From contig NC_086106.1 of assembly GCF_963921235.1 (NCBI RefSeq), positions 19,778,001 through 19,842,000 on the forward strand: a stretch of DNA of 64,000 bases, read 5' to 3'. The notes beneath the pieces were generated by a model. The model was given only the letters and a program-made list of their open reading frames with translations. It was not told where the DNA came from and searched no databases. The translations under genes and the position numbers were made by a program. The DNA is from Mobula hypostoma. Lineage: Eukaryota. Below are positions 4,779-44,856 of the stretch, in pieces (the first letter of the stretch is position 1; the number at the start of each line of letters is the position of its first letter).

Positions 4779-5087
4779 AGGTCAAGTCCACACCATCAGT
4801 CTACATCACTGCTTCCTGGAATGCAAAAACTGACCAAGACATCAGCCTCCTCTGTCTGGTCAAGGACTATCAGCCCGAGAGCATCAGTCAGACATGGTCC
4901 AATAACAGTGGAGACATCAGCAATGGAATCAAGAAATACCCAGCGGTGTTGGGGCAAAATTCAAAGTACACGATGAGCAGCTTGCTCCGAGTCTCTGTGG
5001 CAGACTGGAAGAAGGACAAAGCCTACTACTGCAAGGCAGGGTACACACCGAACGAGATTGTGACAGTGAAGATCCAGAAATCTCAGC
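4779..5087 (+). CDS. IgW: Ig heavy chain (IgW-type) CH1 exon
   Basis: Acceptor ttctttccatttcag|, donor |gttagt; 309 nt, phase 1-1. Translates (E)VKSTPSVYITASWNAKTDQDISLLCLVKDYQPESISQTW...SLLRVSVADWKKDKAYYCKAGYTPNEIVTVKIQKSQ with C1-set Cys/Trp/YxC motifs. Confidence 0.9.
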
Positions 5088-6656: not shown

Positions 6657-6971
6657 ATGTTAAATGTATTGCAGTTCTGAACCTCATCTCCCTTGTTCCA
6701 TCCCCGGAGGATGTCCAAAGTCAAGCCACTGCTGTCCTGGGCTGTATGATCTATGGATTCCATCATCGCAAATTTAATATTGCCTGGAAGAAAGATGGAT
6801 TGATTCAAACGGGCAACATTGTCCCTTCCACTTCAAGAAGCAATGCTAGTTCTGAAACCTTCACTTACCTGTCAATGCCTATGAAGGACTGGATCAACAA
6901 ATCTGAATATACTTGTGAGGTGAAACATCCCTATGGCTTCAGCAGAATGGTCAGCATGAGATATGCAGACG
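6657..6971 (+). CDS. IgW: IgW CH2 exon (5' end ambiguous: 6657 or 6675); read-through tail to stop at 7042
   Basis: (D)VKCIAVLNLISLVPSPEDVQSQATAVLGCMIYGF...IAWKKDG...MKDWINKSEYTCEVKHPYGFSRMVSMRYAD; donor g|gtgagt at 6972. Both candidate acceptors are phase 1 with poor pyrimidine tracts. Read-through adds GESCLKEIYLSCQTISLTLLPNS*. Confidence 0.85.
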
Positions 6972-8539
6972 GTGAGTCATGCTTGAAAGAAATTTACTTA
7001 TCATGTCAAACTATCTCACTGACACTCCTACCCAATTCTTGACTCTTATATCAGTCTTGTTCAGCCACGCATGTTCTTTTGCACACTGAATCAATACTTT
7101 CCAACAGTAACTTTAACCCCTGACTACTGGACAGCAAAGATTCAAGGCAGGATCCCCTACCCACTCAATCTCACATAATTTTTTACTGTTAATGGTAAAA
7201 CCCTCAACAGTATTACCGTACAGAGAAATCTTGTGTTCTCGATCCATAGCTCCCTGAAAGTGGTTGCATAGGTTGATATAGTGTAAAGAAGGCAAATGGA
7301 ATGCACGCCATTATTAGTTAAGGCATTAAGTTCAAGAGTTCAAAAGTTATGTTACAACTTTTGAAAATCCTAGTTAGGCTGCATCTGGAATATTGAATAA
7401 ATATTATTCCTTAAGGAGCAGAATCGGGCAATGTGGCCTATCGATTATGCTCCACCATTCCATCGTGGCTGATTTATTATCCCTCTTAACCCCATTTCCC
7501 TGTGTTCTCCCTGTAAACTTTGATGCCCTTGTTAATCAAGAACCTGTTAACCTATTAAATATTCCCAGAGACAGCCTCCACAGATGCCTGTGGCAATGAA
7601 TTTCACAGTTTCACCACCGTCTAGCGAAAGAAGTTCCTCCTCATTCCTTCAAAAGGGGTGACTTGTATCCTGAGGCTGTGAGCTGTGGTCCTGGGCTCCA
7701 CCACTACAGAACGTATCATCTCCATGTCCACTCGATCTAGTCCTTTCAATATTCAATAGGTTTCAATAAAATTTTCTGAACTTCAGCAAGTAGAGGCTCA
7801 GAGCCACCAAACAGACCTCATGCTGACCCTTTCATTCCAAGTATTGGTCACATGAACCTCCTCTGGATCCCCTCCAGTGTCAATACATCCTTTCATAGAT
7901 GAAGGGCCCAAAACTGTTCACAATATTCCAGTTGCTGTCCAACCTATGCCTCATAGAGCCTCAGCTTTATTCCATTATTCCTGTAATGGTGGCCCCATTA
8001 TAGGAAGGGTTTGTAGGCTTCGGAGAGGTTGCAGAAGAGGTTTATCAGGATGCCTCTTGGATTAGAGGGCATCAGCTATGGGGGAAACTCTGACAAACTT
8101 GGCTTGCTATCTCTGAAGTGGTAGATCCTGAAAGGAGATTTGATAGACCTTCATAAGATTGTCACAGCAATATAGTGTAGAGATCCAGGGTCTAAACAAC
8201 AGGGTTGAAATATCGAAAGCTAGAAGACACACATTTAAAGGTAGGAGGGGATTAAATTCCAAGGAGGTGGATAGGGCAGGATTTGTACACACAGAGAGGT
8301 GGGTGCGGGAATGTGTTGCCAGGGTAGCAGCGGAAGCAAATGTAAAGATATTTCAGAGACTTCTATGTTGAAGTTCATGTGGGAGGCGAAGGCTGTAGAG
8401 ATGCGGAGAGGCGTAGTTGCAGTATGACAAATGTTGTGATGCAAAAGGGCTCTAATCAAAGAATATATTTGATTATCTCTCTGCTATGAAAACTGCATTC
8501 TTCCATCTCAGTGTGTAAAATACATGTTTGGTTTTGCAG

Positions 8540-8574
8540 TATCGGAACGTCACAAGAGTTCTGCAGTCCCAGCG
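8540..8574 (+). other. Candidate 35-nt micro-exon, or start of a terminal exon, before CH3 (copy 1)
   Basis: ttttgcag| ... |gtgagc; length is not a multiple of 3; phase-1 read-through gives VSERHKSSAVPAVSLFVPVMGKGLETQ* (stop 8622). Confidence 0.4.
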
Positions 8575-8795
8575 GTGAGCCTCTTTGTCCCAGTTATGGG
8601 AAAGGGACTGGAAACCCAGTAGAAAGGTTCTTCATTCTGATTTTACATTGCAATAATATCTGACACACTGTTAAAATCTGGGTGTTTTTGTGATTCTGCT
8701 TCTAACGATTACAGGCCTGCTGTTCAGTCCCAACCTAACATAATCAACAGAAAAGTCTCCACTAAAGTTCTGAAGTTTCCATTTCTATTCCACAG

Positions 8796-9098
8796 AATTG
8801 TCTGTCTTTATTCGAAATCCCGACATTGAAGAGATATGGATCAGCAAGACAGCTACTGTGAAGTGCATGGTTCTCTGTACCAATCCACAGGAAATCAACA
8901 TCAGTTGGTTAGTGAACGGGACGAAGTCAAGAAACCCTGTTTTCTCTGAACAACCAGAAAGTAAAGGAATCGTAAAAATAGTGATCAGTACAATGAATTC
9001 CAGTGTAGAGGAGTGGCTCAGCGGGGTGGAGTACAAGTGCGTCATTGAAGATTTCTCCACGTCCACTCAAATGTCAGCAAAGACAAAAAGAACCAAAG
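8796..9098 (+). CDS. IgW: IgW CH3 exon, copy 1
   Basis: tttctattccacag| ... |gtaggc; 303 nt, phase 1-1; ELSVFIRNPDIEEIWISKTATVKC...SWLVNG...SSVEEWLSGVEYKC, homologous to the EEIW-type IgNAR C2/IgW domain. Confidence 0.92.
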
Positions 9099-9188
9099 GT
9101 AGGCAAGATGACCAGCAATTAAAAGGTCAACATTAGATAAAATGAGCAAAAATATTTTATAGTACTATTGTCTGCTTGTCTCTTCCAG

Positions 9189-9506
9189 GAACAACAAAAA
9201 GACCTAATGTCAGATTGCTGCCTCCACCAGAGGAAGAAATCAAGTCCAACAGTGCTGCCGTTCTTGAATGTGTGGTCTCAGGATTCTACCCAGACCATAT
9301 AACTGTCACCTGGGAGAAGGACAGCTCTGTGATCAGCTCCAGCACCAGACCTACACCAACCGCTCTGGAGCAAGGGGGCACTTTCAGTGTCAGACACTTC
9401 CTGACCGTGAGTTTACAGGAGTGGGAGACCGAATCAGTCTTCAGCTGTACAGTGACTCATCCCCCCTCCAACACCCGTATCAAGAAGCAAGTGAAGAACG
9501 TCCAAG
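9189..9506 (+). CDS. IgW: IgW CH4 exon, copy 1 (weak donor; read-through tail to 9571)
   Basis: cttgtctcttccag| after a 90-nt intron; 318 nt; GTTKRPNVRLLPPPEEEI...LECVVSGFYPDHITVTWEKD...TALEQ...FSCTVTHPPS...KNVQ, homologous to the TALEQ-type IgNAR C3/IgW domain; ends aag|gtgttc. Confidence 0.92.
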
Positions 9507-10076
9507 GTGTTCCCTCGGACCCTATGAGAGGCAAGTGCAGAAATTGCTGGGGCTCTAGCAGAGATATTTAAAGCATCCTAAGCAACAGGACAGGCACCAG
9601 AGCATTGGAGGTTAGCCAATCCTGGTCCACTGTTTAAGAAGGGTGGGAGGTAGCAGAAAGGAAACTATAGACCTGTTAGCCTGACATTAGTGGTTGGAAA
9701 GCTGCTGGATGTCATTACAGAGGACCTGCAGGCACGTGACAGAATAGGCCAAAGCCAGCATGGTTTCCTGAAATTAAAATCCTGCCTGTCTAACCTACTG
9801 TAATTTTTTGAGGAAGTTACAAGCAGGGTAGACAAACGAGACGCAGTAGATGTGTTATGCTAGGATTTTCAGAAGGCCTTTGACAAGATGCCACACATAA
9901 GTCTGCTTAGCAAGATAAGAGCTAATGGAATTACAGGGGAGTTACTAGAATGGGTGGAACATTGGCTGATCGGCAGAAAACAGTGAGTGGGAATAAAGAG
10001 ATCGTATTCTGGCTGGCTGACAGTTACTAGTGGAGTTCCAAAGGGGTCGGTGTTGGGACTGCTGCTTTTTACAGTG

Positions 10077-10326
10077 TGTGGGAAACCATGTATATACGTT
10101 GTAACTCGGTTACTTGTCTGGACACACACCTCTGCTGACTGCCCCTGTGGCTCCTCTGACTGCCCTTGTGGCTCCTCCCACAGAGTCCTGTATAAAGGTG
10201 TTCGCCTTGCCCCTCACCCTCAGTCCGGGGGCAGACACTCACTGTGGAGGTCGTATTGTACAGCGAATAAAAGCCTTTCAGTATTTTACCAAACCTCAGT
10301 CTTTTGGAGTAATTGAAGGTGCTTCA
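10077..10326 (+). repeat. 5' LTR (250 bp)
   Basis: Matches the 3' LTR with ~7 substitutions plus a 21-bp internal duplication (ctgactgcccttgtggctcct); TATA-like tataaa at ~10190; AATAAA at 10266-10271. Confidence 0.95.
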
Positions 10327-10352
10327 ATTTTATTCGCTGTACATTTTAAAAC

Positions 10353-11270
10353 ATGGAACAGCCCCTGACACCAGACAAATTAGACCTCGATCTGCAAATG
10401 CCTGACGCTGGAAACGCTTTCGAACTCTGGCTGGCCTGCTTCGAAGCGTATCTAGAGGAGATTAAAGCGACCAACTCCGTAGCGAAGCGCAGAGTTCTAC
10501 TCTCCAGGGTCAGTCCACGGGTTTATTCGCTGATCAGAGACCAGCCGAACTACGACGGCGCGACGAACGCACTCAAAAGACAATACCTGCGGCCGATAAA
10601 CAGCGTCTATGCTTGGCATCGCTTAGTGACATGGCAACAATGGTCCGGGGAATCGAGTGCTGAGTTTGTCCGGGCCCTACAGACACTCGTGCGGGCCTGC
10701 ATTGCCAGGAGCTGACGGCGGCGCAGCATGCAGAGCTCCTAGTGAGAGACGCCTTCGTTACGGGGACCAGGTCAGTGTAGTGCGCCAGCGGCTGCTGGAA
10801 AAAGCCGATCTGACCCTAAGTTCGGCGATCGAGCTGGCTGATACGTTGGAGGCCGCTCTGCATAACTCCGAGGCTCTCCAGGCACGCGATCCCCCAATGG
10901 CCTCGTGGGCGCCGCAGACCCCGCAACCCGCCGGCGAATCGACCTCGGCTGCAGCCAGTCGTGAGTCCACGAAGTGCTACTTCTGCGGACTGGAGAAGCA
11001 CCCCTGGAAACGCTGCGCGGCCCGACAAGCTACCTGTTCCAGCTGCGGAAAGAAGGGCCACTTCGCCAAGGTCTGTAAGTCAAAACCGCGAGCGGGATCA
11101 AGCAGCGCCGCGTGCGAGACGTGGGGGTCGCCATCTTCCCTGCACACTGCCACCACGTGCGAGACATGGGGGCCGCCATCTTGGTTGGCGCCACCTCCCA
11201 CTGCCTACGACCAACGGGTGCTCACGGGCCACCGCACCGTGCCGGACCAAGACAGCGACCCCCACCCTGG
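10353..11270 (+). pseudogene. gag: Gypsy gag with zinc knuckle, frameshifted
   Basis: MEQPLTPDKLDLDLQ...; two apparent 1-nt frameshifts near 10700 and 10780; RQRLLE motif and CSSCGKKGHFAKVC knuckle. Confidence 0.85.
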
Positions 11271-14227
11271 CTTCCGTGACCCTCGGCCAGAGCGATCCCC
11301 ACCAGCTCGCAAGGTCAATGATGGACATCCTGGTGGAGGGGCACAGGACAAGCTGCCTGTTTGACACAGGCAGCACAGAGAGTTTTATCCACCCGGCCAC
11401 GGTGCAGCATTGTGGACTCATGTTACGGCCGGTAAGTCGGAGGGTCACCATGGCCTCCAGGTCGCATACAACAGACATCCGGGGGGGTTGTGTAGCGACA
11501 CTAGTGGTGCAGGGCACAGAATATCGGGACTTTACGTTACTAGTCTTGCCTCAACTGTGTGCCCCTGTGCTGTTGGGGTTCGACTTCCAGATACACCTGA
11601 AAAGCGTGACAATGAAGTATGATGGGCCCCTCCCGCTAATTACTGTTATAAATCCCCTGTTTTGTAGAGATATGTCACATATCCCGCTACTGACCACACA
11701 CACACACCGACCCGCGCATCCCACCCAACATCATGCCAACTGCCACACTACCGACACCACTTGCGGCCTCTCCACCCTCAGGATCCCTCCCCCACCGCTG
11801 TTCGCCAACCTGACCCCCGACTGTAAACCTGTGGCAACTAAAAGCAGGAGGTACAGCGCGGGGGACAGAGCCTTCATTAAGTCGGAGGTGCAGCGGCTGC
11901 TCAGGGAGGGGGTCATTGAGGCAAGCACAAGTCCTTGGAGGGCGCAGGTGGTCGTTGTTCAGAACGGGGAGAAAAATAGGATGGTCGTGGACTATAGCCA
12001 GACCATCAATAGGTTCACGCAGCTCGACGCGTACCCTCTATCCCGCATCGCGGATATGGTCAATCAGATAGCACAGTACAAGGTGTACTCGACCACAGAC
12101 CTAAAATCCGCTTACCATCAGCTCCCCATCCACCGGGAGGACCGCCCTTACACTGCCTTCGAGGCGGACGGCAGGCTTTATCAATTCCTGCGCGTCCCCT
12201 TTGGTGTCACGAATGGTGTATCTGTCTTCCAGAGGGCAATGGACCAGATGGTGGACCAGTGCCAACTGAAGGCCACGTTCCCATATCTGGATAACATCAC
12301 CATCTGCGGTCACGACCAGCAGGATCACGACAACAACCTCCAAAAATTTCCCCAAGCGGCCAAATCTTTCAACCTCACCTATAACAAGGACAAGTATGTA
12401 TTTGGGACCACCTGACTTGCTATCCTTGGGTGTGTCGTGGAGAATGGAGTCATTGGCCCAGACCCCGACCGTATGCGCCCCCTGTTGGAACTCCCTCTTC
12501 CCAATACCCTCAGAGCCCTCAAAAGGTGCCTGGGCTTCTTTTCATATTACGCCCAATGGGTCTCTAACTATGCAGACAAGGCCCGCCCCCTGGTCAAGTC
12601 CACCACATTCCCCCTCTCTGCCGAGGTCCACACGGCCTTCAGCCGCATAAAAGAGGACATTGCCAAAGCAGCAATGCATGCGGTGGATGAGGCCATTCCC
12701 TTCCAAGTAGAGAGTGACGCCTCCGACTTTGCGCTGGCTGCTACCCTCAACCAGGCAGGAAGACCAGTGGCGTTCTTCTCCCGTACCCTTCAAGGCCCTG
12801 AAATTCAGCACTCTGCGGTAGAGAAAGAGGCCCAGGCCATAGTGGAAGCTATAAGGCGCTGGAGGCACTATTTTGCCGGCAAAAGGTTCACCCTGCTAAC
12901 TGACCAGCGCTCAGTCGCGTTCATGTTTAATAATCAGCAGCGGAGCAAAATCAAAAATGATAAAATTCTGAGGTGGAGAATCGAACTCTCCACCGACAAC
13001 TATGACATCATGTACAGGCCTGGGAAGCTCAACGAGCCCTCCGATGCCCTATCCCGGGGAACATGTGCCAGCACGCAGATCGACCGGCTAGACGCCCTAC
13101 ATGTAGACCTTTGCCACCCGGGAGTCACCCGGCTTTTCCACTTCGTGAAAGCCCGGAACCTGCCTTACTCCCTTGAGGAGATCAGGATGATGACCAGGGA
13201 CTGCCAAGTCTGCGCAGAGTGCAAACCACACTTCCACCGACCCGAAAAGGTACCACTCATCAAGGCCACCCAACCCTTTGAGCGACTGAGTGTCGACTTT
13301 AAGGGCCTCCTTCCCTCCACCGACCGCAATGTGTACTTTCTTAACGTAATTGACGAGTACTCGCGGTTCCCCTTCGCCATCCCCTACCCCGACACCACTA
13401 CCACGTCAGTTATAAAAGCCCTGCGCAAGCTCTTCACTCTGTTCGGATACCCATGCTATATCCACAGTGACAGAGGGTCCTCGTTTATGAGTGATGAGCT
13501 GCGCCGATATCTACTGGCTAGGGGAATTGCAACCAGTAGGACCACGAGCTATAATCCCCGGGGGAATGGACAGGTAGAGAAGGAGAATGCCACGGTGTGG
13601 AAGGCCACACTCTTAGCCCTCAGGTCAAAGGGACTGCCGGTCTCCCGCTGGCAGGAGGTCCTTCCCGAGGCACTCCACTCCATCCACTCCCTGTTATGCA
13701 CGTCCACCAATGCCACCCCTCATGAGCGGCTCTTTTCATTTCCCAGAAAGTCGACCACTGGGACCACCCTACCAACTTGGCTGACGACCCCGGGGCCAGT
13801 GCTGCTTCGGAAACATGCGAGGAGCAATAAATACTCCCCGATGATCGAGAGGTTTCACTTACTTCATGCGAACCCCCAGTATGCCTACGTGGTTTTACCT
13901 GATGGGTGGGAGGACACGGTCTCCATCTGCGACCTGGCGCGTGCAGGAGCTCCGGGCCCCTACCCTGAACACTCCGTGGTGACTATTGACCCTGTACCCA
14001 CCAATGTATGTACCTACAAGACACCGTGCACCCCAAACCCTATACAGACACCACACGACACTCCCATACCGGGCGCGACGCACACGCATGAGGGATTACC
14101 GACGCCTAACGTGCTGGCACCTGAAGTCAGGCCGGAGCCAGCACAACCACCATCGCCGGTGCAATCACCACCGGTGCTACGTAGATCACAGCGACGGACT
14201 CGACCGCCTGATAGACTTAACCTGTAA
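11270..14227 (+). pseudogene. pol: Gypsy pol (protease, RT, RNase H, integrase) with one in-frame stop at 12413-12415
   Basis: LFDTGS protease; RMVVDY, DLKSAYHQ, VPFG and YLDN RT motifs; ESDASD RNase H; HHCC and D-D-E (SVDFKG, HSDRG, NGQVE) integrase. ORFs 10961-12415 and 12437-14227 share one frame. Confidence 0.92.
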
Positions 14228-14295
14228 ATATACTTCTTGTAAATATTGTCAGTCACTTCACCCCACTGGACTCTTTTTAAAAAAGGAGGGGTGAA

Positions 14296-14524
14296 TGTGG
14301 TAAACCATGTATATATGTTGTAACTCGGTTACCTGTCTGGACACACCCCTCTGCTGACTGCCCCTGTGGCTCCTCCCACAGAGTCCTGTATAAAGGTGTT
14401 TGCCTTGCCCCTCCCCCTCAGTCCGGGGGCAGACACTCACTGTGGAGGTCGTATTGTACAGCGTATAAAAGCCTTTCAGTATTTTACCAAACCTCAGTCT
14501 TTTGGAGTAATTGAAGGTGCTTCA
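14296..14524 (+). repeat. 3' LTR (229 bp)
   Basis: Direct repeat of 10077-10326, preceded by the PPT and followed by TSD cagtg. Confidence 0.95.
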
Positions 14525-16824
14525 CAGTGTATGTCAATGATTTGGACTATGGGTTTGGACTAGTGTTGAGGAAACAGACAGCCTGCAGAGAGATTTAGAT
14601 AGTTTAGGTTTAGGGGAATGGGCAGAGAAGTGACCAATGAAATACAATGTTGGAAATTGTGTGGTCATGCACTTTGGTGGAAGAAATAAACGGGCAGGCT
14701 ATTACTTAGATGGGGAGAGAATTCAAAATGCAGAAATGTAAAAGGACTTGGCAATCCTTGAGCAGGATACCCGAAAGGTTAACCTCCAGGGTGAGTCGGT
14801 GGTGAAGAAGGTAAATGCAATGTTGGCATTCATTTCTAGAGGTATAGAATATAAGAGCAGGGATGTGATGTTGAGGCTCTATTAGGCATTTGTGAGACCA
14901 CACTTAGAGTATTGTGTGCCGTATTGGGCTCCTTATCTTAGCAAGTAAATACTGCCATTGGGGAGAGTTCAGAGAAGATTCACGAGAATGATTCCAGGAA
15001 TGAAAGGCTTACCGTATGAGGAACGTCTGGCAGTTCTTGGGCTGTATTCCCTGGCGTTCAGGAGAATAAGGGGCGATCTCATAGAAACATTCTGAATGTT
15101 AAAAGGCCTGAAAAGATTAGATATGGCAAAGTCATTTCCCATGGTAGGGGAGTCTAGGACAAGAGGGCATGATTTCAGGATTGATGAACGTCCATTTAGA
15201 ACAGAGATGCGGAGAAATGACTTTAGTCAGAAGATGGTAAATCTGTGGAATATGTTCCCACAAGTGGCTGTGGAGGCCAAGTCATTGGGTGAATTTACGT
15301 CAGAGATAGATAAGTTCTTGATTAGCCAGGGCATCAAAGGGCATGGGAAGAAGGCAGGGGAGTGGGGATGACTAGATCAGCCCATAATTGAATGGCGGAG
15401 CAGTCTTTATGGGCAAAATAGCTTACTTCTGCTCCTGTATCTTATGGTCTTATGGTCATATAAACAGAATCCAGGAAATTGTAAGCCGGTGAGTCTGACA
15501 TCAGTTGTGGAAAAATTATTGGAAGCTATTCTATGGGACCGGATACATGAGTATTTGGATTGATATGGACTGATTAAGGATAGTCAGCATGGTTTTGTGC
15601 ATGTAGGGCACATCTAACTAATCTTATGGAGGTTATTGAGGAAGTTACTAGGAATGTTAATGAAGACAAGGCAGTGGATGTTGTCTACATGCACTTTAGT
15701 AAGGTACGTGACAAAGTACCACATGGGAGGCTGGTCGAGAAGGTTCCTTCGCTTGGCATTCAAGATGAGGCAATAAATTGGATTTGTGGAAGAAGCCAGA
15801 GTGTGGTGGTAGATGGTTGCCTCTGGAGACCTGTGACTAGCGGAGTGCCACAGGGAATGGTGCTGGGTCCATTGTTTGTTAACTTTGTCAATGATCTGGA
15901 TGATAAAATGGTTAATTGGATCAGCAAATTTCTGTTGACACCAAGATTGGAGGTGTAGTGTCCAGCAAGGAAGGCTATCGTGGCTTGCAGAGCGATCTGC
16001 ATCAGGTGGAAAAATTGAATGAAAAATAGGAAATAGGAAATGGAATTTAATGCAAACAAGTGTAAGGTTTTGCACTTCAGGACGAACATCCAGGGTAGGT
16101 TTTACACAGTGAATGTTAGGACACTGAGGAGTGTGGTAGAACAAAGGGATCTGGGAGTACAGATACATAATTCATTGGAAGTGGTGTCACGGGTAGATAG
16201 GATCATGAAAGCTGCTAGCAAATTGGACTTCATAAATAAATGTATTGAGTACACGAGGTGGGATGCTGTGCTCCGTGCCTGCTAATATGATGAACTGATA
16301 AGTGAGGCTTTGGGCCTGCTCCAGGCTGCTCTAGGGTTCAAACCTGCAGACTCAGTTTTGGTTTGGAATGTTGTTGTTTGCTACAATTACATGCATGCTT
16401 TGCATTTTGTTTTCTTTCTCTTGTGCACTGGATGTAGTCTTTTATTTTTTTTAAATGAGTTCTCTCGGGTTTCTTGGTTGTGGCTACCTGTGAGAAAGCT
16501 AATCTCAAGACTGTACAATAATGAATTCTTCGATAATAAATGTACTTGATTATTGAACCTGAACTTGAATGTTCTGTTGAAGTTGTCTAAGACATTAGTG
16601 AGACCTAATTTGGAGTATTGTATGCAGTTTTGGTCAGCTACTTACAGGAAAAATGTAAATTAGGTTGAAAGAGTGCAAAGAAAATTTACAAGGATGTTGC
16701 CGAGTCTGAAGGACCTGAGTTATAGGGAAAGATTGAATAGGTTAGGACTGTATTCTTTGGAATATAGAAGGTTGAGAGGAGATTTGATAGAGGTGTACTA
16801 AATTAGCAGGGGTATAGATAGGGT

Positions 16825-17043
16825 CGGCTGGCTGGTGGCGTAGTGGCATCAGCGCCAGACTTCGAAGCGAAGGCTCCCAAGTTTCAATCCAGCCAACTCC
16901 CTTGCAGGCTTTCGATCCATGCCGGGTTGAGCGTCAAACTAGCAACTCGGCCTTGAAAAAATAAGAAAGCCTGCTAAAAAGATGCCATCGTAACAGCATC
17001 CCGATGACACCACTCAGAGTTAAGGGCTTTCTTCTTCTTCTTC
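16825..17043 (+). mobile_element. tRNA-derived SINE (copies at 28329-28550 and 40996-41207)
   Basis: A-box-like tggcgtagtgg, B-box-like gttcaaatcc (clearest in copy 2), (ttc)n tail, 11-bp TSD atagatagggt; inserted in a CR1 fragment. Confidence 0.85.
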
Positions 17044-18255
17044 ATAGATAGGGTAAATTCAAGCAGGCTCTTTCCACTAAGGTTGGGTGAAACTACAACC
17101 AGAGGTCATGGGTTGAGGTGAAAGGTGAAAAGTTTAACGGGATCACGAGGGCAAACTTCTTCACTCATAAGGTCATGAGAGAGTGGAACGAGCTGCCAGT
17201 GCAAGTGGTGCATGCGAGCTCAAATTTCAACACTTAAAAGAAGTTTGGATAGGTACTTGGATAGTAGGGATACGGAAGGCTAAGATCCTGGCGTAAGTCC
17301 ATGGAAATAGGCAGTTTAAATAATTTTGGCACAGACTAGATGGGCCGAAGGGCCTGTTTATATGCTGTACTTCTCTATGACTCTCTCACTTTGCTGCAAA
17401 TCCCTCATATGAAAATGCTCTGTCCCTCTGCCGTTCAACGTAATCCCAGCCTCTGATCAGTGCCTCAGTTGTGACTGAATTTCCAGCACAGCAGCTCTCC
17501 CTCTGCTCCTGTGTGGGAATATTCAGCCTGAACAATGTGTAGAAGCCTCTCGAGGGCGGCTTGAACACACAACATTCTGAAAACGCAGCTGGAAATTTCA
17601 GTTACGAGTTTCCAAAATGATTAAGATTCTTAGGATACACAGTGACTTGGCTGATTGCATTCAGAATAGGCTTGCCCATTGAGGACAGAAGGTAGTGATC
17701 GATAGGTCCTAATCTGGAGAATAGTTCGTGTCCAGTGGTGCTCAGCAGAGGGATGTAATGGGAAAGTCTGCAGTTTGTGCTACATGTAACCTGAATGAAA
17801 ATGTGGATGGCTTGGTTAATGAGTGTGCAGAGGATACAAAGATTGTGGCAATGAATTCCCCAGATTCAATATCCACTTGGCTAAAGAAATTCATCCTCAT
17901 ATCTGTTTTAATGGCATGCAGTTGTGACCTCCGGTCGTAGATACCACAACGACAGTACATATAATCTCCATGTCCACTTTATCTTGGCCTTTCAATAATC
18001 AATAGGGTTCAAAGAGATTTTTAAGGCTCAGAGACATCAAACATTCCTCATAAATTAACCGCTTCATTCCCAGAATTATTCATGTGAACTTCCTCCGGAC
18101 CCTCCCCAATGCCAGCACATCCTTTCTTAGATAAATAGCCCAAAACTGTTCACAATGCTCCACGTGGTCAGTAAGACCAATGCCTTTCAGAGCCTCAGCT
18201 TTATAACATTATTCTTATAATGGTGGCCCTATTATAGGAAGGATGTGTAGGCCTT

Positions 18256-21200
18256 GGCAAGGAAAGCACAGGAGCACTGTCAGGCCTGCTTTGGTTCGGT
18301 GGACTGGACTGCATTCAGGGATTCACCTTTGATTTTGGATGAGCATGCTGCAGATGTTACTGACTTCATTAAACCTGTGTGGATGAGTGTGTGCCTGCAA
18401 AAACCTGCTGTACATTCCCAAACCAAATGCCCTCGATGAACCAGGAGGTCCATCATCTGCTAAAGGCTAGATCTGTGGCATTTAAGTCTGGTGACCTAGG
18501 TCTGTACAAAAAATCCAGATATGATTTGCGGAGGGCTATTCCTAGAGCGAAGAATCAATTTCAGTTGGAGGCGACATCCAGTGAGTGTCAACTCTGGCAG
18601 GTTTGCAGGATATTAATTCCTTACAAAGCAAAACCCAATAGCATGAATCGCAGGGATACTTCACCACCAGATGAATTCAATGCCTTCTATGCCCATTTTG
18701 AAAGGGAGAATATAACTGCAGCTGTGAACATCCCTGTTGCACCTGGTGACGCTGTGATCTCTGTCTCAGAGGCCGATGTTAGGCTGTCTTGAAAGAGGGT
18801 GAACCCTCATAAGGTGGCAGAGCCAATGCAGTATCTGGTAAGGCTTTGAAAATTTGTGCCAAACAACTGGCGGGAGTATTCAAGGACAACTTCAATCTGT
18901 CACTGCTATGGTCAGAAGTTCCCACCTGCTTCAAAAAGGAAACAATTATACCAGTGCCTAAGAAGAATAATGTGAGCTGCCTTAATGACTATCGACCAGT
19001 AGCACTCACATCCACATTAATGAAATGCTTGGAGAGTTTAGTCATGGCTAGAATCAATTCTCGCCTCAGCAAGGACGTGGAGTCACTGGAATTTGCCTAT
19101 TGCCACACAAGGTCTGCAGCAGATGTGACCACAATGGCTCTTCACACAGACTGAGACCACCTGATCAATACAAACACCTATGTCAGGATGCTGTTCGTTG
19201 ACTATAGCTCAGCATTCCAACAGTACTGATCGATATGCCACAGAACCTAGGCCTCTGTATCTCCCTCTGCAATTAGATCCTTGACTTCCCAACAGAAAGA
19301 CCATAATCTGTTCAGATTGATGATAATATCTCCTCCTCGCTGATGATCAATACTGGTGCACCTTAGCCCAATGCTCTACTCCCTCTACAACCATGACTGT
19401 GAGGCTAGGTATAGCTCAAATACCATCTATAAATTTACTGATGATACAACCATTGTTGGTAGAACCTCAGATGGAGACAAAAGGGCCTACTGGAGCGAGG
19501 TATGCTAACTAGTGGAGTGGTGTTGCAGCAACAAACTTGCTCTCAAAGTCAGCAAGAAAAAGAGCTGATTGTGGACTTCTGGAGGTGTAAGAAGAAGGAA
19601 CACATACCAATCCTCATAGAGGGATTGAAAGTGGAAAGAGGGAGCAATTTCAAGTTTCTGGCTGTCAAGATCTCTGCGCATCTAACCAGGTCCCAACATA
19701 TCGATGCAGCTTTGAAAAAGGCAAGACAGTGACTATATTTCATTAAGAGTTTGAAGAGATTTGGCTTGTCAGCTAAAACACTCAAAAACTTCGATAGATG
19801 TACCATGGAGAGTATTCTGACAGGCTGCATCACTGTTTAGTTTGGGGGTGCTACAGCACAGGACCGAAAGAAGCTACAGAAAGTTGTAAAAGTTCCCTCA
19901 TGGTACTATCCTCGGTTGTATCCAAGACATCTTCAAGGAGCAGTGCTTCAGGAAGATAGATAGTTAGCTAGATAGATAGGAACACAGAAACATAGACAAC
20001 CTACAGCAAACTACAGGCCCTTCGGCCCACAATGCTGTGGGGAACATGCCCTTACTTTGGGAATGACCTATTTTTTGAGCCCTCTATTTTTCTGAGCTCC
20101 ATGTACCCATCCAGGAGTCCCTTAAAAGACCCTATTGTATCCGCCTCCACCACCACTCCCGGCAACCCATTCCACACACATCACTCTCAGCATAAAAAAC
20201 TTACCACAACATCTCCTCTGTACCTACTTCCAAGCACCTTAAACCTGTGCCCTCTCATGTTAGGCATTTCAGCCCTGGGAAAAAGCCTCTGACTATCCAT
20301 ACAATCAATGCCTCTCATCATCTTATACACCTCTATCAGGTCAACTCTCATCCTCCGTCCTCCAAGGAGAAAAGGCCAAATTCGCTCAATCTATTCCCAT
20401 AAGGCATGCTTCCCAATCCAGGCAATATTCTAGTCCATCTCCTCTGCACTCTTTCTATGGTTTCCGCATCTTTCCTGTAGCGAGGCGACCAGAACTGAGC
20501 ACAGTACTCCAAGTGGGGTCTGACCAGGATCATATATAGCTGCGAAATTACCTCTCGGCTCCTAAACTCATTCCCACGGTTGATGAAGGCCAATGCACCA
20601 TATGCTTTCTTAACCACAGAGTCAACCTGTGTAGCAGCTTTGAGTGTCCTATTGACTCAGATTCCAAACTTCCTCTGATCCTCTACACAGCCAAGAGTCT
20701 TACTATTAATACTACATTCTGCCATCATATTTGACCTTCCAAATTGAACCACCCATCACTTATCTGAGTAAAACTCCATCTGGCACTTCTCAGCCCAGTT
20801 TTGCATCCTATCGATATGCCGCTGTAAGCTCTGACAGCCCTCCACACTATCCACAACAGCCCCAACCTTTGTGTCATCAGCAAATTTACTAACCCATTCC
20901 TCCACTTCTTCATCCAGGTCACTTATAAAAATTACTAGGTAAAGGGGTCCCAGAACAGATTCCTGAGGCACATCACTGGTCACGGACATCCATGCAGACT
21001 ATGAACCGTCCACAACCACTCTTTGCCTTCTGTGGGAAATAGAACATAGAACATAGAACATAGAACAGTACAGCACACTACAGGCCCTTTGGCCCACAAT
21101 GTTGTGCCGACCCTTAAACACTGCCTCCCATATAGCCCCCCACCTTGAATTCCGAATCCACAAAGCAATGTCCACTTGGATCCCATGCCTCTCTACTTTC

Positions 21201-23880
21201 TCAATAAGCCTTGCATAGGGTACCTTATCAAATGCCTAACTGAAATCCATATACACTACATCTACTGCTCTACCTTCATCAATATCTTTAGTCATATCCT
21301 CAAAAAATTCAAACAGGCTCGTAAGGCACGACCTGCCTTTGACAAAGCCATACCTGACTATTCCTAATTCTATTATGCCTCACCAAACGTTCACAAATCC
21401 TGCCTATCAGGATCTTTTCCATCAACTTACCAACCACTGAGGTAAGACTCACTGGTCTATAATTTCCTGGGCTATTTCCACCCCCTTTCTTGAATATGGG
21501 AACAACGTCCACAACCCTCCAATCCTCTGGAACCTCTTCCGACTCCATTGATAATGCAAATATCATTGCCAGAGGCTTAGCATTCTCCTCCGTCATCTCC
21601 CACTGTAGCCTGGGGTACACCTCGACCGGTCCAGGTGACTTATCCAACTTGATGCTTTCCAAAAGCTCCAGCACATCCTCTTTCTTCATAGCTATATGCT
21701 CAAGATTTTTACTCGCTGTAAGTTATCCCTACAATCACCATAATCCTTACCCGTAGTGAATACTGAAGCAAAGTATTCATTAAGTACCTCTGCTATCTCC
21801 TCCGGTTCCATATGCACGTTTCCACTGCTGCACTTGATTGGTGCTGTAATCTCACATCATATTCTCTTGCTCTTCACATACTTGTAGAATGCCTTGGGGT
21901 TTTCCTTTATCCTGTGCACCAAGGCCTTCTCAAGGCCCCTTCTGGCTCTCTTAATTTCATTATTAAGCTCCTGCCTGCTAGCCTATATTCTTCTAGATCT
22001 CCATCATTACCTAGGTTTTTGAACCTTTCGTTGGCTTTTCTTTTCTCCTTGACCAGATTTACAACAGCCTTTGTACACCACGGTTCCTGTACCCTACAAT
22101 CTTATCCCTGTCTCATTGGAACATACCTTGGTAGAACTCCACATAATATCCCCTGAACATTTGCCACATTTCTGCCGCACATTTCTCTGAGAACATATGT
22201 TCCCAATTTATAATAGACAGATAGATAGGTACTTTATTGACCCCAAAGGAAATTACAGTGTCGCAGTAGCATTACAAGTGCACAGGTATACAAATATTAG
22301 AAGAGAAGTAGGAAAGAATAAAAAAAATTACCTCAAACAGTCTAACAGGAGGGGGTCATCACTCCCCCGACTATAGGTTGACTCATTATACTGCCTAATG
22401 GCTGAGGCCAAGAATGACCTCATAGAGCACTCTCTGGAGCAGCTCTGTAGTCTTAGTCTATTACTGAAAGTGCTCCTCTGTTCAGTCAAGGTGGCATGCA
22501 GAAGGTGAGAAACACTATCCAGAATTGCCAAGATTTTCCATCGGGTCCTTTGTTCTACCATAGCCTCCAGTGTGTCCAGTTTGACTCCTATAATAGAGCC
22601 AGCCTTTATAATCAGTTTACTGAGCGTGTTGGCAACACACTTGTTGACACCATTGCCCCAGTACACCACCACATAGAAGATTGTACTGGTGACAACAAAC
22701 TGGTAGAACATATGCAGGAGGGACCTGCATACTCCAAAGGACCTTGGTCTCCTCTGGAAGTGGAGGTGATTCTGGACCTTCCTCTACACAGCCTCTATGT
22801 CGGTGCTCCACTCGTCTGTCATACAGGTGAACCCTCAGGTACTTGTAGATCCTCACAACATCCACGTCCGCACCATCATTGGTAACAGGGAGCAGTGCAG
22901 GCTTAGTCCTCCTAAAGTCCATCACCATCTCCTTTGTCTAACTGATGTTGAGCTGCAGATGATTCAGCTTGCACCATTTGACAAGATCCTCCACCAAGGC
23001 CCTGTATTCATTCTCCCATAATCCCCTTATACACCCAACTATTGCTGAGTCAGTGAATCTTGGCAGATGACATGACTCAGTGTTATATCTAAGGTCCAAG
23101 GTAATCAGGGTAAACAGCAAGGGAACCAGTACAGTTCCCTGTGGGCCCCTAGTGCTGCTGATAACATGTCTGACACACAGCTCTTAAGCTGCACGTACTG
23201 TGGTCTGCCACTCAGGTAGTCTATTATCCAGGATACAATGGAAATGCCAATCTGAATCGAATGGAGCTTTCACCCAGCAATGAGGGCTGTATGGTATTGA
23301 GGGCACTTGAGAAATCAAACAAACATCATCCTCACACTGCTGTCCTGCTTATCCAAACGGGAGAAGGCGCTGTTCAGCAGGTAGATGACGGCATTGCAAC
23401 TCCAATGTGCTCCTGGTAGGCAAACTGCAGGGGATGAAGGACTGATCTGACCAGGAGTCAGAGGTGAGCCAGGTCCGGCCTCTCTAGGATGTGTGAGGTC
23501 ACGGCCACCTCCATTATTGAGGACCCCCATCACTCAAGATATGCCCTCTTCTCATTGTTACCATCAGGAAGGAGGTACTGAAGCCTGAAGGCACACACTC
23601 AGTGATTCAGGAACAGTTTCCTCCCCTCTGCCATACAATTCCTAAATGGACATTGAACCGATGCACACTACCTCACTTTTCGAAAATATATCTTATTTTT
23701 GCATTTCCACTACTTTTAATCTAGTTAGTATATATATATATATATATATATACACTTCCTGTAATTGATTTACTAATTTATTTTAAATTGTTTCTTTTTA
23801 TATATATTATATGGAACTGCTGTTGCTAAGCTAACAAATTTCACGACACATGCTGGTGATAATAAACCTGATTCTGATTC
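18256..23880 (+). mobile_element. Rex1/Babar-type LINE split by nested CR1 and Rex1 insertions (copy at ~31006-36570)
   Basis: RT fragments at 18256-19955 ([19 protein letters not shown]) resume at ~23500 (ccattattgaggacccccatcac) and end in ataataaacctgattctgattc; ~19960-23500 is minus-strand CR1 and Rex1-like pieces. Confidence 0.75.
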
Positions 23881-24408
23881 TTTGGAGAGGTTGCAGAAGA
23901 GGCTTATCAGGATGCTACCTGGATTAGAGGGCTTGGGTTATGAGGGGAAGTCAGACAAACTTGGCTTCTTTTCTCTGAAGTGGTAGATCCTGAAAGGAGA
24001 TTTGACAGACCTTTATAAGGTTGTCAGAGGTATAGAGTGTAGAGAGCCAGTGTCTACATTCAGTAGCAGGGGTGAAATAGCTAAAGCTAGATGGCATGCA
24101 TTTCAGGTAGGAGGGGATTTAATTCAAAGGAGATAGGCTGTGCAGGTTTTGTGCACATAGAGAGGTGGCTGGAATGTGTTGCCAGGGGTGGCATTGGTTG
24201 CAAATACAGAGATATTTCAGAGACCTTTATATGGGAACATGTTGAAGTTCATGCGGGAGGTGAAGGCTGTAGTGATGGGGAGAAGCATGGTCACAGTACG
24301 ACTGAAATGTTGTGATGCAAAGGGGCTGCAATCATAGATGTATTCTATTGTTTCTGTCCTATGAAATTTGCACGCTTCCCTCTCACTGTGTTAAGTTTGG
24401 TTTTGCAG

Positions 24409-24443
24409 TATCACCCCATCACAAGAACTCTGCAGTCACAGTA
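24409..24443 (+). other. Candidate 35-nt micro-exon, copy 2
   Basis: ttttgcag| ... |gtgagc; read-through VSPHHKNSAVTVVSLFVPVMGKGLENQ* (stop 24491). Confidence 0.4.
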
Positions 24444-24659
24444 GTGAGCCTCTTTGTCCCAGTTATGGGAAAGGGACTGGAAAACCAGTAGAAAAGTTCC
24501 TCGTTCTGATTTTACTTTGCAATAATTTCTGATTCACTGCTCAATTCTGGGTGTTTTTGTGATTCTACCTCTAATGATGACTGCTGTTCAGTCCTGACCG
24601 AACGTAATCTACGGAAAAATCTCCACTAAACTTCTGAAGTTTCCATTTCTATTCCACAG

Positions 24660-24962
24660 AATTGTCTGTCTTTATTCAAAATCCCGACATTGAAGAGATA
24701 TGGATCAGCAAGACAGCTACTGTGAAGTGCATGGTTCTCTGTACCGATCCACAGGAAATCAACATCAGTTGGTTAGTGAACGGGACGAAGTCAAGAAACC
24801 CTGTTTTCTCCGAGCAACCAGAAAGTAAAGGAATCGTAAAAATAGTGATCAGTACGATGAGTTCCAGTGTAGAGGAGTGGCTCAGCGGGGTGGAGTACAA
24901 GTGCGTCATTGAAGATTTCTCCACGTCCACTCAAATGTCAGCAAAGACAAAAAGAACCAAAG
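24660..24962 (+). CDS. IgW: IgW CH3 exon, copy 2
   Basis: Open frame, same splice sites as copy 1; 6 nucleotide differences from copy 1. Confidence 0.92.
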
Positions 24963-25052
24963 GTAGGCAAGATGACCAGCAATTAAAAGGTCAGCATTAG
25001 ATAAAATGAGCAAAAATATTTTATAATACAATTGTCTGCTTGTCTCTTCCAG

Positions 25053-25370
25053 GAACAACAAAAAGACCTAATGTCAGATTGCTGCCTCCACCAGAGGAAG
25101 AAATCAAGTCCAACAGTGCTGCCATTCTTGAGTGTGTGGTCTCAGGATTCTACCCAGACCATATAACTGTCACCTGGGAGAAGGACAGCTCTGTGATCAG
25201 CTCCAGCACCAGTCCTACACCAACCGCTCTGGAGCAAGGGGGCACTTTCAGTGTCAGACACTTCCTGACTGTGACTTTACAGGAGTGGGAGACCGAATCA
25301 GTCTTCAGCTGTACAGTGATTCATCCCCCCTCCAACACCCGTATCAAGAAGCAAGTGAAGAATGTCCAAG
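25053..25370 (+). CDS. IgW: IgW CH4 exon, copy 2 (read-through tail to 25435)
   Basis: Open frame; 7 nucleotide differences from copy 1; ends aag|gtgttc. Confidence 0.92.
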
Positions 25371-36362: not shown

Positions 36363-36380
36363 ATACACACACACACACAG

Positions 36381-36431
<51 letters not shown>

Positions 36432-36447
36432 GAACATATATATATAT
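36363..36447. repeat. Compound microsatellite (CA)n(TA)n(GA)n(TA)n
   Basis: Visible directly; the equivalent position at ~23726-23755 has only (TA)n. Confidence 0.9.
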
Positions 36448-37652: not shown

Positions 37653-37742
37653 GTAGGCAAGATGACCAGGAATTAAAAGGTCAACATCAGATAAAATGAG
37701 CAAAAATATTTTATAGTACTATTGTCTGCTTGTCTCTTCCAG

Positions 37743-44855: not shown

Positions 44856-44856
44856 A

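What the first reader, a model, noticed from the sequence alone, without database searches (positions are those of the whole stretch)
9480..9997. CH4 splice donor fused to a LINE creates a new Cys-containing secretory-type tail
The fourth CH4 ends aag|gtaggg, but copies 1-3 end aag|gtgttc, joined directly to CR1 ORF2 sequence. The homologous CR1 at ~21610-21650 (-) has aggtg at that point, suggesting the breakpoint used aggt microhomology. The donor is weakened (+4 to +6 non-consensus), and read-through in a frame shifted from the LINE ORF gives GVPSDPMRGKCRNCWGSSRDI* (CxxC; one Cys in copy 3). AATAAA lies ~420 nt downstream in all copies (9992, 25856, 38546). Because the native tailpiece is broken, the locus may have exapted LINE sequence as its secretory tail, with the weak donor acting as the secreted-versus-membrane switch.
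Basis: partly seen in the sequence, partly recalled or inferred. Interest (0 to 1): 0.8.

Follow-up and report, generated by a model that had tools for sequence, protein, structure and literature searches.

The report
LINE fused to IgW exon donor
In a transcribed antibody (IgW) gene of a cartilaginous fish, a jumping-gene fragment sits exactly at the splice site after one constant-domain exon, but the short cysteine-bearing "tail" it would add is a built-in by-product of that jumping gene, with no sign that it was selected as a secretion tail.

Summary
Three copies of a constant-domain exon end CAAG|GTGTTCCC and run straight into LINE ORF2 sequence. A fourth, partial copy ends CAAG|GTAGGG, as do about 23 paralogous exons elsewhere on the chromosome.

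The interpretation needs correcting. The gene is an IgW (IgD-type) minilocus, not IgM. Its layout is V/J, C1, C2, three C3-C4 blocks, a broken C6 tailpiece remnant, then an intact TM1 exon. "CH4" is therefore an internal exon, and its donor normally joins C5, a later C3/C4-type pair or TM1.

The junction lies in a 6-nt microhomology (CAAGGT) shared with the parent LINE subfamily. Eight of nine full-length copies examined encode a 21-codon peptide with the KCRNC motif and the same stop in that +1 frame. The ninth keeps KCRNC but runs on to a later stop. The tail was therefore not shaped after the fusion. Copy 3 has lost one Cys, and 35% of AAGGT sites in the window read open that far.

RNA contigs show the cluster is transcribed and correctly spliced from C1 to C4. 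One short contig crosses the donor into the LINE, which may be pre-mRNA. Exaptation is unsupported but not excluded. The scan holds no earlier record of such a junction on other DNA.

The parts
4779..5087 (+). IgW C1 exon (C1-set Ig domain)
   Evidence: Pfam C1-set, E 5e-15. RNA joint 5087>6675 with GT..AG ends and contigs with 0 mismatches. Acceptor ...catttcag|AGG.
6675..6971 (+). IgW C2 exon
   Evidence: Pfam C1-set, E 4e-14. RNA joints 5087>6675 and 6970>8795 (cut +1).
8796..9098 (+). C3 exon, copy 1. Copies 2 and 3 lie at 24660-24962 and 37350-37652.
   Evidence: Pfam C1-set. tblastn finds three copies at 92-100%. RNA joint 9096>9187 (cut +2) in all four runs. Contigs carry letters diagnostic of copy 1, copy 2 and copy 3. 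All three copies keep intact acceptors.
9189..9506 (+). Copies 2 and 3 lie at 25053-25370 and 37743-38060.
   Evidence: Pfam C1-set, E 5e-21. 71-79% aa identity to 18 C4-type exons of sister clusters, and 61-63% to seven terminal C8-type exons, on the same chromosome.
9501..9508 (+). Junction: exon end CAAG plus GT, the 6-nt microhomology CAAGGT shared by the native donor and the parent LINE. The fused donor reads AAG|GTGTTC.
   Evidence: The native form tcCAAG|GTaggg is seen in copy 4 and in the 18 C4-type paralogous exons; the seven terminal C8-type exons read CAAG|GTATGA. Most of eleven full-length LINE copies read gaCAAG|GTGTTCCC.
9506..9571 (+). Read-through ORF of 21 codons plus TAA. Copies 2 and 3 lie at 25370-25435 and 38060-38125.
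   Evidence: Eight of nine free LINE copies give the same length, Cys motif and stop in this frame.
9507..10077 (+). 5'-truncated CR1-like LINE fragment, first part. In copy 1 it continues at 14561-15464 after the Gypsy insertion. It lies at 25371-26922 in copy 2 and 38061-39611 in copy 3.
   Evidence: 85-88% identical to thousands of genomic copies. The ORF2 frame is recognisable. The 3' end carries TCTTATGG x2.
9992..9997 (+). AATAAA inside the LINE ORF2 (codons G-I-K). Also present at 25856 and 38546.
   Evidence: Its use as a poly(A) signal was not tested.
10077..14560 (+). Gypsy-type LTR retrotransposon, present in copy 1 only. It accounts for the 15.86 kb versus 12.69 kb spacing.
   Evidence: Pfam protease, RVT_1, RNase H and integrase. 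LTRs at 10077-10326 and 14296-14524.
8018..41211 (+). Tandem array of the C3-C4-LINE unit: unit 1 is 8018-23880, unit 2 is 23880-36572, and unit 3 (partial) is 36572-41211.
   Evidence: Self-BLAST diagonals at about 90-92% identity. Repeat families.
41216..44855 (-). Inverted copy of unit positions 17054-20156. It ends exactly where the partial fourth C4 begins.
44855..45020 (+). Fourth C4: only the 3' half of the exon, with the native donor CAAG|GTAGGG and about 300 nt of native intron after it.
   Evidence: 94% identical to the C4 of the reference sister cluster, including 53 nt of intron..
45610..45790 (+). Remnant of the C6 exon end, canonical secretory tailpiece and 3' UTR. C5 and about 80% of C6 are missing, one extra T shifts the frame, and the stop is lost. 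AATAAA lies at 45942.
   Evidence: Alignment to the intact sister C6, which ends ...KSHSKPTLVNVSLVLTDSFKSCV*.
63172..63308 (+). Intact TM1 exon: phase-1 acceptor, ...FLFIISFLYSTFVTIVK, donor AAG|GTAATC.
   Evidence: Motif scan and comparison with the sister cluster's TM1.

Best explanation
The window holds an IgW (IgD-orthologue) heavy-chain minilocus of a cartilaginous fish. V and J lie about 19 kb upstream. Downstream come C1, C2, a C3-C4 block, a remnant of the C6 tailpiece, and an intact TM1 exon. Before the C3-C4 block was tandemly triplicated, a 5'-truncated CR1-like LINE became joined to the C4 exon inside a 6-nt microhomology (CAAGGT). The route was either microhomology-mediated 5' attachment during retrotransposition or a microhomology-mediated deletion against a LINE already in the intron. 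The join kept the exon and the GT intact but replaced intron positions +3 onward, and the native C4-C5 intron is gone from these copies. The 21-codon Cys-containing read-through is simply the +1 frame of a conserved LINE ORF2 segment. It is an incidental by-product, not an evolved secretory tail. The cluster is still transcribed and spliced from C1 to C4. I infer that the C4 donors, weakened but not dead, still join the next C3 copy or TM1, and that RNA crossing the donor is mostly unspliced precursor or non-adaptive read-through. Shown: the anatomy, the derived state of the junction, the microhomology, the LINE origin of the peptide, transcription and C1-C4 splicing. Inferred: the order of events, the fate of the C4 donor, and the lack of function of the tail.
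For: Isotype and gene model:
- Four C1-set exons.
- A VH and a J upstream.
- TM1.
- Sister clusters on the same chromosome with C1-C6, a canonical tail on C6, an extra C3'/C4' pair and TM.
- The literature describes IgW miniloci with 6-8 C exons, TM forms with 2 and 4 C domains, and several secreted forms made by alternative splicing (PMC5192425, PMC4279169).

Derived junction:
- The 18 C4-type paralogous exons and copy 4 keep GTAGGG and the seven terminal C8-type exons read GTATGA; none carries the LINE junction.
- No other LINE-fused copy exists in the genome.

Microhomology and LINE origin of the peptide.

Chance level:
- 35% of AAGGT sites give at least 21 open codons, and 7% also have at least 2 Cys.
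- The native intron read-through of 22-33 codons with Cys is no better conserved than intron further on: 90% identity against 91-94%.

No sign of constraint:
- Copy 3 lost one Cys and changed two other residues.
- Tail divergence is 0-4.5%, against 2-4% in the exons and 4-8% in the LINE.
- The exons themselves have dN/dS of 0.26-1.
- There is no N-glycosylation sequon and no penultimate Cys.

RNA:
- GT..AG joints for C1>C2, C2>C3 and C3>C4.
- Exact-match contigs for C1 and C2.
- Introns such as 6279-6640 and 8089-8631 are empty, so the runs are RNA.
- Diagnostic letters of all three C3-C4 copies appear in spliced contigs.
Against: - One RNA contig (run X3, 94 nt, word depth 172) runs from C4 across the donor 18 nt into the LINE. 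Its depth is no lower than that of the upstream exon contigs (89-95), so read-through may be frequent rather than rare.
- No contig was shown that joins a fused C4 donor to a C3 copy or to TM1. Many joints and pieces were not listed, so use of the donor is inferred, not seen.
- The cluster has lost C5, C6 and its tailpiece. If it makes any secreted product, the 3' end must be unconventional.
- Copies 1 and 2 have identical tails, where about 3 differences would be expected from the LINE flank (P about 0.05).
Confidence: 0.6

Rival explanations
1. Real but non-adaptive truncated product. The weakened donor often fails, and transcripts are cleaved and polyadenylated inside the LINE (AATAAA or ATTAAA) or, in copy 1, in the Gypsy LTR. 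The result is a secreted V-C1-C2-C3-C4 IgW chain ending in the LINE-encoded 21 residues. This would be a neutral or mildly harmful by-product rather than a selected isoform.
For: A contig crosses the donor at a depth comparable to exon contigs. The donor lost its +5 G. Poly(A) hexamers lie 200-490 nt downstream in each copy. The cluster has no canonical secreted 3' end.
Against: Pre-mRNA is clearly present in the same runs. One contig crosses the C1 donor, and intron 5279-5507 is covered at about half the exon depth. The 18-nt crossing is below the tool's own 31-nt bridging rule. Contigs cannot show RNA ends, and no poly(A) evidence exists. C3-C4 of copies 2 and 3 are present in spliced RNA, so transcription reaches beyond copy 1.
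Confidence: 0.25
2. After losing its own tailpiece, the cluster uses the LINE-encoded Cys tail as its secretory tail, and the weak donor acts as the switch between the secreted form (read-through) and the membrane form (spliced to TM1).
For: TM1 is intact and the canonical tail is broken, so a switch at this donor would be the only one left. The tail has Cys residues that could form interchain bonds. The tail is identical in copies 1 and 2.
Against: In nine free copies of the LINE the +1 frame gives the same KCRNC motif, and eight of the nine give the same length and stop. Copy 3 lost a Cys. There is no sequon or penultimate Cys as in canonical tails. The ORF length is at chance level. The exons themselves show relaxed constraint. 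In IgW the donor after C4 natively serves exon-to-exon choices, not read-through (PMC5192425, PMC4279169).
Confidence: 0.06
3. Transcribed relic. The fused donors no longer work, the C region cannot be completed to TM or to a tail, and the RNAs seen are sterile or decay-targeted transcripts of a dying cluster.
For: C5 and C6 are lost, there is an inversion and a half exon at the end of the array, the region is dense with transposable elements, and dN/dS is near 1 for some copy pairs.
Against: C1-C4 are open and correctly spliced, all three C3 acceptors and TM1 are intact, and spliced C3-C4 contigs of copies 2 and 3 are easiest to explain by splicing from upstream exons.
Confidence: 0.09

Closest known systems
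Nurse-shark IgW (omega) miniloci with 6-8 C exons and many isoforms (Zhang, Du Pasquier & Hsu 2013 and Rumfelt et al. 2004, as summarised in PMC5192425 and PMC4279169)
   Same: The cluster organisation (V, D, J, C exons, TM) is the same. C exons are duplicated in adjacent pairs. The donor after C4 is a natural branch point, since membrane forms with 2 or 4 C domains and secreted forms with 2, 4, 6 or 8 are reported. The canonical tail sits on the last C exon of the sister clusters.
   Different: Here the C3-C4 pair is triplicated together with 12.7 kb of transposon-rich spacer. C5, C6 and the tail are lost. The donor is fused to a LINE. According to the abstract of Zhang 2013, recalled from memory because the paper is not held, the described alternative secreted ends come from dedicated secretory exons, not from a transposon.
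IgM mu-s/mu-m switch (tailpiece contiguous with CH4, competing splice donor and poly(A) site)
   Different: The mu tailpiece is a conserved stretch of about 20 residues with a sequon and a penultimate Cys. The LINE tail has neither, is not conserved, and follows an internal IgW exon. Poly(A) competition was not tested.
5'-truncated LINE insertions with microhomology at the 5' junction, and LINE-driven premature polyadenylation or exonisation in introns (established for mammalian L1; from general knowledge)
   Same: The fragment starts inside LINE ORF2, has a 6-nt microhomology at the 5' junction, lies in sense orientation within a gene, and carries internal AATAAA motifs.
   Different: No target-site duplication could be identified, because the 3' flank is another LINE. 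The native intron is absent, so a large deletion or a separate rearrangement is needed. The junction coincides exactly with a splice donor.
Tandem C-exon block duplications in IgD/IgW of teleosts, sturgeon and coelacanth, and the (C2-C3)x4 repeats of UrIg2 (PMC5192425, PMC12227049)
   Same: Blocks of adjacent C exons are repeated and kept similar, probably by gene conversion.
   Different: The repeat unit here is 12.7 kb and mostly transposon debris. Whether the repeats are spliced in series is unknown. The exons are only about 33-35% identical to UrIg2 domains, so this is not UrIg2.

Membership tests
IgW (IgD-orthologue) heavy-chain minilocus of cartilaginous fish | VH and JH upstream of C exons on the same strand | tested here: met
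   A VH ending ...YYCAK and a J (WGKGTSLTVTS) lie about 19.5 and 18.8 kb before the window start, on the + strand.
IgW (IgD-orthologue) heavy-chain minilocus of cartilaginous fish | Series of C1-set exons in phase 1, organised as C1, C2 and C3-C4-type pairs | tested here: met
   Pfam C1-set on all four exon types. Phase-1 GT..AG joints in RNA. The C3-C4 pair is separated by a 90-nt intron, as in the sister clusters.
IgW (IgD-orthologue) heavy-chain minilocus of cartilaginous fish | C5-C6 pair with the canonical secretory tail on the last secreted-form exon | tested here: not met
   Only a frameshifted remnant of the C6 end and tail remains, at 45610-45790. The sister cluster has it intact.
IgW (IgD-orthologue) heavy-chain minilocus of cartilaginous fish | Ig-type TM1 exon downstream | tested here: met
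   Exon at 63172-63308, close to the sister cluster's TM1 by eye (not scored), with intact splice sites.
IgW (IgD-orthologue) heavy-chain minilocus of cartilaginous fish | Orthology to named IgW sequences (e.g. nurse-shark IgW) | not testable with these tools
   The protein database search returned nothing and PDB holds no IgW. The assignment rests on architecture, on the roughly 8-9 sister clusters with 6 or more C exons, and on an earlier scan note calling them ray IgW.
Canonical Ig secretory tailpiece (mu/alpha/omega type) | About 18-20 residues with an N-X-S/T sequon and a penultimate Cys, conserved among paralogues | tested here: not met
   The LINE tail has no sequon, its Cys residues lie 11 and 8 residues from the end, and copy 3 lost one. 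The native tail of sister clusters is KPTLVNVSLVLTDSFKSCV.
Canonical Ig secretory tailpiece (mu/alpha/omega type) | Use of a proximal poly(A) site in secreting cells | not testable with these tools
   Only contigs were available, and they cannot show RNA ends.
5'-truncated non-LTR (CR1-like) retrotransposon insertion | Homology to ORF2 of an abundant LINE family that begins internally | tested here: met
   Thousands of first-look candidates, with the 40 scored copies at 85-88% identity. Full-length copies continue upstream of the junction point.
5'-truncated non-LTR (CR1-like) retrotransposon insertion | Microhomology at the 5' junction | tested here: met
   CAAGGT is shared by the C4 donor and the LINE.
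5'-truncated non-LTR (CR1-like) retrotransposon insertion | Target-site duplication, with native flank resuming after the LINE 3' end | tested here: inconclusive
   The 3' end (TCTTATGG x2 at about 26922) abuts another 5'-truncated LINE. No native intron is found in units 1-3. The clade (CR1 versus L2 and others) was not tested.

The most novel reading that the evidence does not exclude
Having lost C5, C6 and its canonical tailpiece, this IgW minilocus makes its only secreted isoform by skipping the LINE-weakened C4 donor and polyadenylating inside the LINE. The result is an antibody heavy chain whose C-terminal Cys-bearing tail is encoded by the +1 frame of a retrotransposon ORF2. Splicing of the same donor to TM1 gives the receptor form.
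Probability: 0.07. Interest if true: 0.75.

Novelty: new variant of a known kind. Interest (0 to 1): 0.3.

Why it matters
If the LINE-encoded tail were really used, it would be the first antibody secretory tail supplied by a transposon. It would also show how a minilocus can regain a secreted/membrane switch after losing its own.

On the evidence here it is more modest. It is a well-resolved example of microhomology-mediated LINE fusion that lands exactly on a splice donor without destroying exon or GT, inside an expressed IgW cluster that was then triplicated. That is useful for annotating IgW loci, because these extra C3-C4 copies and their read-through ORFs could be mistaken for isoforms. 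It also adds to the picture of transposon-driven remodelling and concerted evolution of cartilaginous-fish Ig clusters.

Tried and rejected
- IgM reading: rejected. Sister clusters show that this exon type is followed by C5, then C6 with the tail, then C3'/C4' and TM.
- UrIg2: rejected. Domains are only about 33-35% identical, and a rearranging V/J lies upstream.
- Loose ends after 9506 and 9497 in RNA looked like splicing of this donor to a C5 exon. They match C5 exons of paralogous clusters, and no such exon is in the window, so they are not evidence for this donor.
- Junction-word search in public runs: only 5 sampled words were available. Runs of several other organisms held as many as the RNA runs, so the words held are probably LINE-only. 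Uninformative.
- Protein database search with the C4 ORF: no hits.
- PDB searches: only generic Ig constant domains.
- The primary IgW isoform paper (PMID 23935192, PMC3839419) is not held. Statements about its secretory exons rest on my memory of the abstract.
- Native read-through ORF (GRVLGL...LVM*) as a conserved native 4C tail: rejected. It is no more conserved than the intron further on.
- Simple LINE insertion with the native intron resuming after it: not found.
- Splice-strength scoring with a trained model was not possible offline. Only position-by-position comparison was done.

Full report
WHAT IS THERE

The window is G000:C40:19778001-19842000 of a 3.48-Gb genome. The 27-mer at the end of the exon occurs four times, against 0 expected. 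In copies 1-3 the exon ends ...GTCCAAG and continues GTGTTCCCTCGG. These exons lie at 9189-9506, 25053-25370 and 37743-38060. In the fourth copy, at 44855-45020, the exon continues GTAGGGTCCTGG.

WHICH GENE

The window holds single C1 (4779-5087) and C2 (6675-6971) exons. It holds three C3-C4 pairs and one half C4. All are Pfam C1-set domains. A VH and a JH lie about 19 kb upstream on the same strand. An intact Ig-type TM1 exon lies at 63172-63308.

Searching the whole genome with the C4 exon finds about 8-9 clusters at 18.36-19.82 Mb on the same chromosome. Each has one to five C4-type exons (71-79% aa identity). Most clusters also have one terminal variant (61-63%).

I read one sister cluster through, at 19.066-19.086 Mb. 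It contains C1, C2, C3, C4, C5 and a C6 with a contiguous canonical tail (...KSHSKPTLVNVSLVLTDSFKSCV*). A further C3'/C4' pair follows, and then TM1.

This is the IgW (IgD-orthologue) minilocus architecture. Reviews describe nurse-shark IgW clusters with six to eight C exons. They report membrane forms with two or four C domains and secreted forms with two, four, six or eight, all made by alternative splicing (PMC5192425, PMC4279169). An earlier follow-up in this scan independently calls the sister clusters ray IgW, with a membrane-specific C3'/C4' pair.

UrIg2 is excluded. Its domains are only about 33-35% identical, and this gene has a V/J upstream. Its donor natively feeds C5, a later C3/C4-type pair or the TM exons. 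It is not a mu-type tailpiece.

THE JUNCTION

The 18 C4-type paralogous exons, and the window's own fourth copy, have CAAG|GTAGGGTCCTGG; the seven terminal C8-type exons read CAAG|GTATGATT. GTGTTC is therefore derived and unique to this array.

The sequence after the donor belongs to a very abundant LINE. There were 2,518 and 11,561 first-look candidates, and the 40 scored copies from each search are 85-88% identical.

Of eleven copies of the closest subfamily that continue upstream, most read ...CCTGACAAG|GTGTTCCCTCGGACCCTATGGGAGGCAAGTGC.... The exon end and the LINE therefore share CAAGGT. The breakpoint lies somewhere inside these six bases, which is why the exon, its phase and the GT all survived.

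The LINE fragment runs to a 3' end with TCTTATGG x2, at 15464, 26922 and 39611. It then abuts another 5'-truncated LINE. The native C4-C5 intron is nowhere in units 1-3. The event was therefore one of two things. It could be a LINE 5'-end attachment accompanied by a large deletion. Or it could be a microhomology-mediated deletion against a LINE that was already downstream. I cannot tell which.

The fusion predates the triplication, because all three units share it. The units are 8018-23880, 23880-36572 and 36572-41211, at about 90-92% identity. Copy 1 carries an extra Gypsy element at 10077-14560. The array ends in an inverted copy of unit positions 17054-20156. That inverted copy stops exactly where the half C4 begins, at 44855.

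After the half exon come about 300 nt of native intron. Then comes a remnant of the C6 end with the tailpiece, at 45610-45790. C5 and about 80% of C6 are missing, one inserted T shifts the frame, and the stop is lost. "Native tailpiece broken" is therefore right.

IS THE TAIL MORE THAN CHANCE?

No.
- Eight of nine full-length LINE copies give G-x-P-x-D-P-x-x-GKCRNC-W/x-G-x-S-R-D-I-stop in the same +1 frame. The ninth keeps KCRNC but runs on to a later stop. The peptide is the out-of-frame reading of the conserved ORF2 stretch ...PDKVFPRTL-EASAEIAGALAEIF.
- Length, CxxC and stop were therefore all present before the fusion.
- 35% of the 160 AAGGT sites in the window read open for at least 21 codons. 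7% also carry at least 2 Cys.
- The native intron gives 22-33 open codons with one or two Cys in most paralogues. That stretch is no better conserved (90%) than the next 350 nt of intron (91-94%).
- Among the three copies the tail differs at 0, 3 and 3 of 66 sites. The exons differ at 2-4% and the LINE at 4-8%.
- The exons themselves have dN/dS of 0.26-1 on very few changes.
- Copy 3 lost the second Cys.
- The tail has no sequon and no penultimate Cys.
- The AATAAA is the codon string G-I-K of the LINE ORF2.

DONOR STRENGTH

By inspection, the native donor is AAG|GTAGGG, which keeps the +5 G. The fused donor is AAG|GTGTTC, with a purine at +3 but no +4 A, +5 G or +6 T. It is weaker but keeps six contiguous U1-pairing positions (-3 to +3). 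The gene's TM1 donor, AAG|GTAATC, also lacks the +5 G. No trained splice model was available.

RNA

Four runs of one organism (X1-X4, one study) were laid as contigs on 4650-10060.
- They are RNA. Unique intron stretches are empty, for example 6279-6640 and 8089-8631. The joints 5087>6675, 6970>8795 and 9096>9187 have GT..AG ends.
- The C1 and C2 contigs match with no mismatch, so this very cluster is transcribed and spliced.
- Spliced C3-C4 contigs carry the diagnostic letters of copy 1 (X1), copy 2 (X4: 8992G, 8997G) and copy 3 (X3, X4). One is a mosaic (X2).
- One 94-nt contig in X3 spans 9431-9524, which is 18 nt past the donor into the LINE. Its word depth is 172, against 89-95 for the upstream exon contigs. 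That is below the tool's own 31-nt bridging criterion.
- The same runs clearly contain precursor RNA. One contig crosses the C1 donor, and intron 5279-5507 is covered at about half the exon depth.
- Loose ends after 9506 and 9497 belong to paralogous clusters' C5 exons.
- No listed joint shows a fused donor being used, but most joints and pieces were not listed.
- Contigs cannot show RNA ends.
- A second run search with the junction stretch had only five sampled words and was uninformative.

MECHANISM AND ODDS

- Most likely (0.6): an incidental, microhomology-mediated LINE fusion that spared the donor. The tail ORF is a by-product of the LINE. The cluster remains active, with its C4 donors still joining the next C3 copy or TM1.
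- Next (0.25): read-through RNAs are truly processed and give a LINE-tailed truncated chain, without evidence that this is selected.
- A transcribed dead relic: about 0.09.

COMPARISON AND NOVELTY

The locus works like, and by architecture belongs to, the IgW miniloci. It fails one defining feature, the C5-C6 pair with the canonical tail, because that part is deleted. I found no paper linking IgW C regions with a retrotransposon-derived end.

I rate it a new structural variant of a known kind, of moderate-to-low interest unless poly(A)+ LINE-tailed transcripts or protein are shown.

Noticed in passing
window 10077-14560 (LTRs 10077-10326 and 14296-14524): The Gypsy element present only in copy 1 has LTRs only about 89% identical, while the tandem units around it differ by 4-10%. 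Either the units are being homogenised (gene conversion or unequal crossing-over), or the element was lost from the other units.
   Followed up: partly
window 41216-44855 (-) versus 17054-20156 and 28561-32913: The array ends in an inverted copy of an internal unit segment, and its end coincides with the breakpoint inside the fourth C4 exon (44855). This points to a complex rearrangement (inversion or template switching) rather than simple unequal crossing-over.
   Followed up: partly
window 8815-9406, RNA run X2 contig 11: A spliced C3-C4 RNA contig is a mosaic of copy-3 letters and copy-1/2 letters, and all runs show A at 9425 where all three assembled copies have G. The sequenced animals carry alleles or extra copies not in the assembly, consistent with ongoing exchange between copies.
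   Followed up: no
window 5058-5137 and 5279-5507: RNA contigs cross the C1 donor and cover the first about 450 nt of the C1-C2 intron at about half the exon depth, while the rest of the unique intron is empty. This may be retained intron or an alternative 3' end after C1.
   Followed up: no
L004-L021 (C40 18.37-19.71 Mb), first 100 nt after each C4 donor: The native intron reads open for 22-33 codons (GRVLGL..PLLKLFTLCYEFKVNTESWCSPGLVM*) in most paralogues. It is no better conserved than the intron further on, so it is probably not a coding tail.
   Followed up: yes
G000:C40 18.36-19.82 Mb: Sister IgW clusters differ in the number of C4-type exons, from one to five per cluster, each followed 8-15 kb later by a terminal C3'/C4' pair. 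The cluster at 19.70 Mb, like the window's, shows no terminal pair.
   Followed up: partly
G000:C1:44491331-44516212: Eight copies of the LINE segment recur at a regular spacing of about 3.53 kb, so a LINE fragment is embedded in a tandem (satellite-like) repeat.
   Followed up: no
window 45580-45610: A strong polypyrimidine tract and AG (ctgtctccctctccacag) lie just before the C6-tail remnant. Joined in phase 1 to a C4 donor, it would give D-T-D-stop followed by the native 3' UTR and AATAAA (45942). This is a possible cryptic terminal exon.
   Followed up: no
window 9507-9625 versus 9626-10077: The best-matching genomic LINE copies for the 3' part (from 9626) are a different subfamily from those matching the first 119 nt. 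The fused LINE is therefore either a mosaic of subfamilies or spans a region where the subfamilies diverge sharply.
   Followed up: partly
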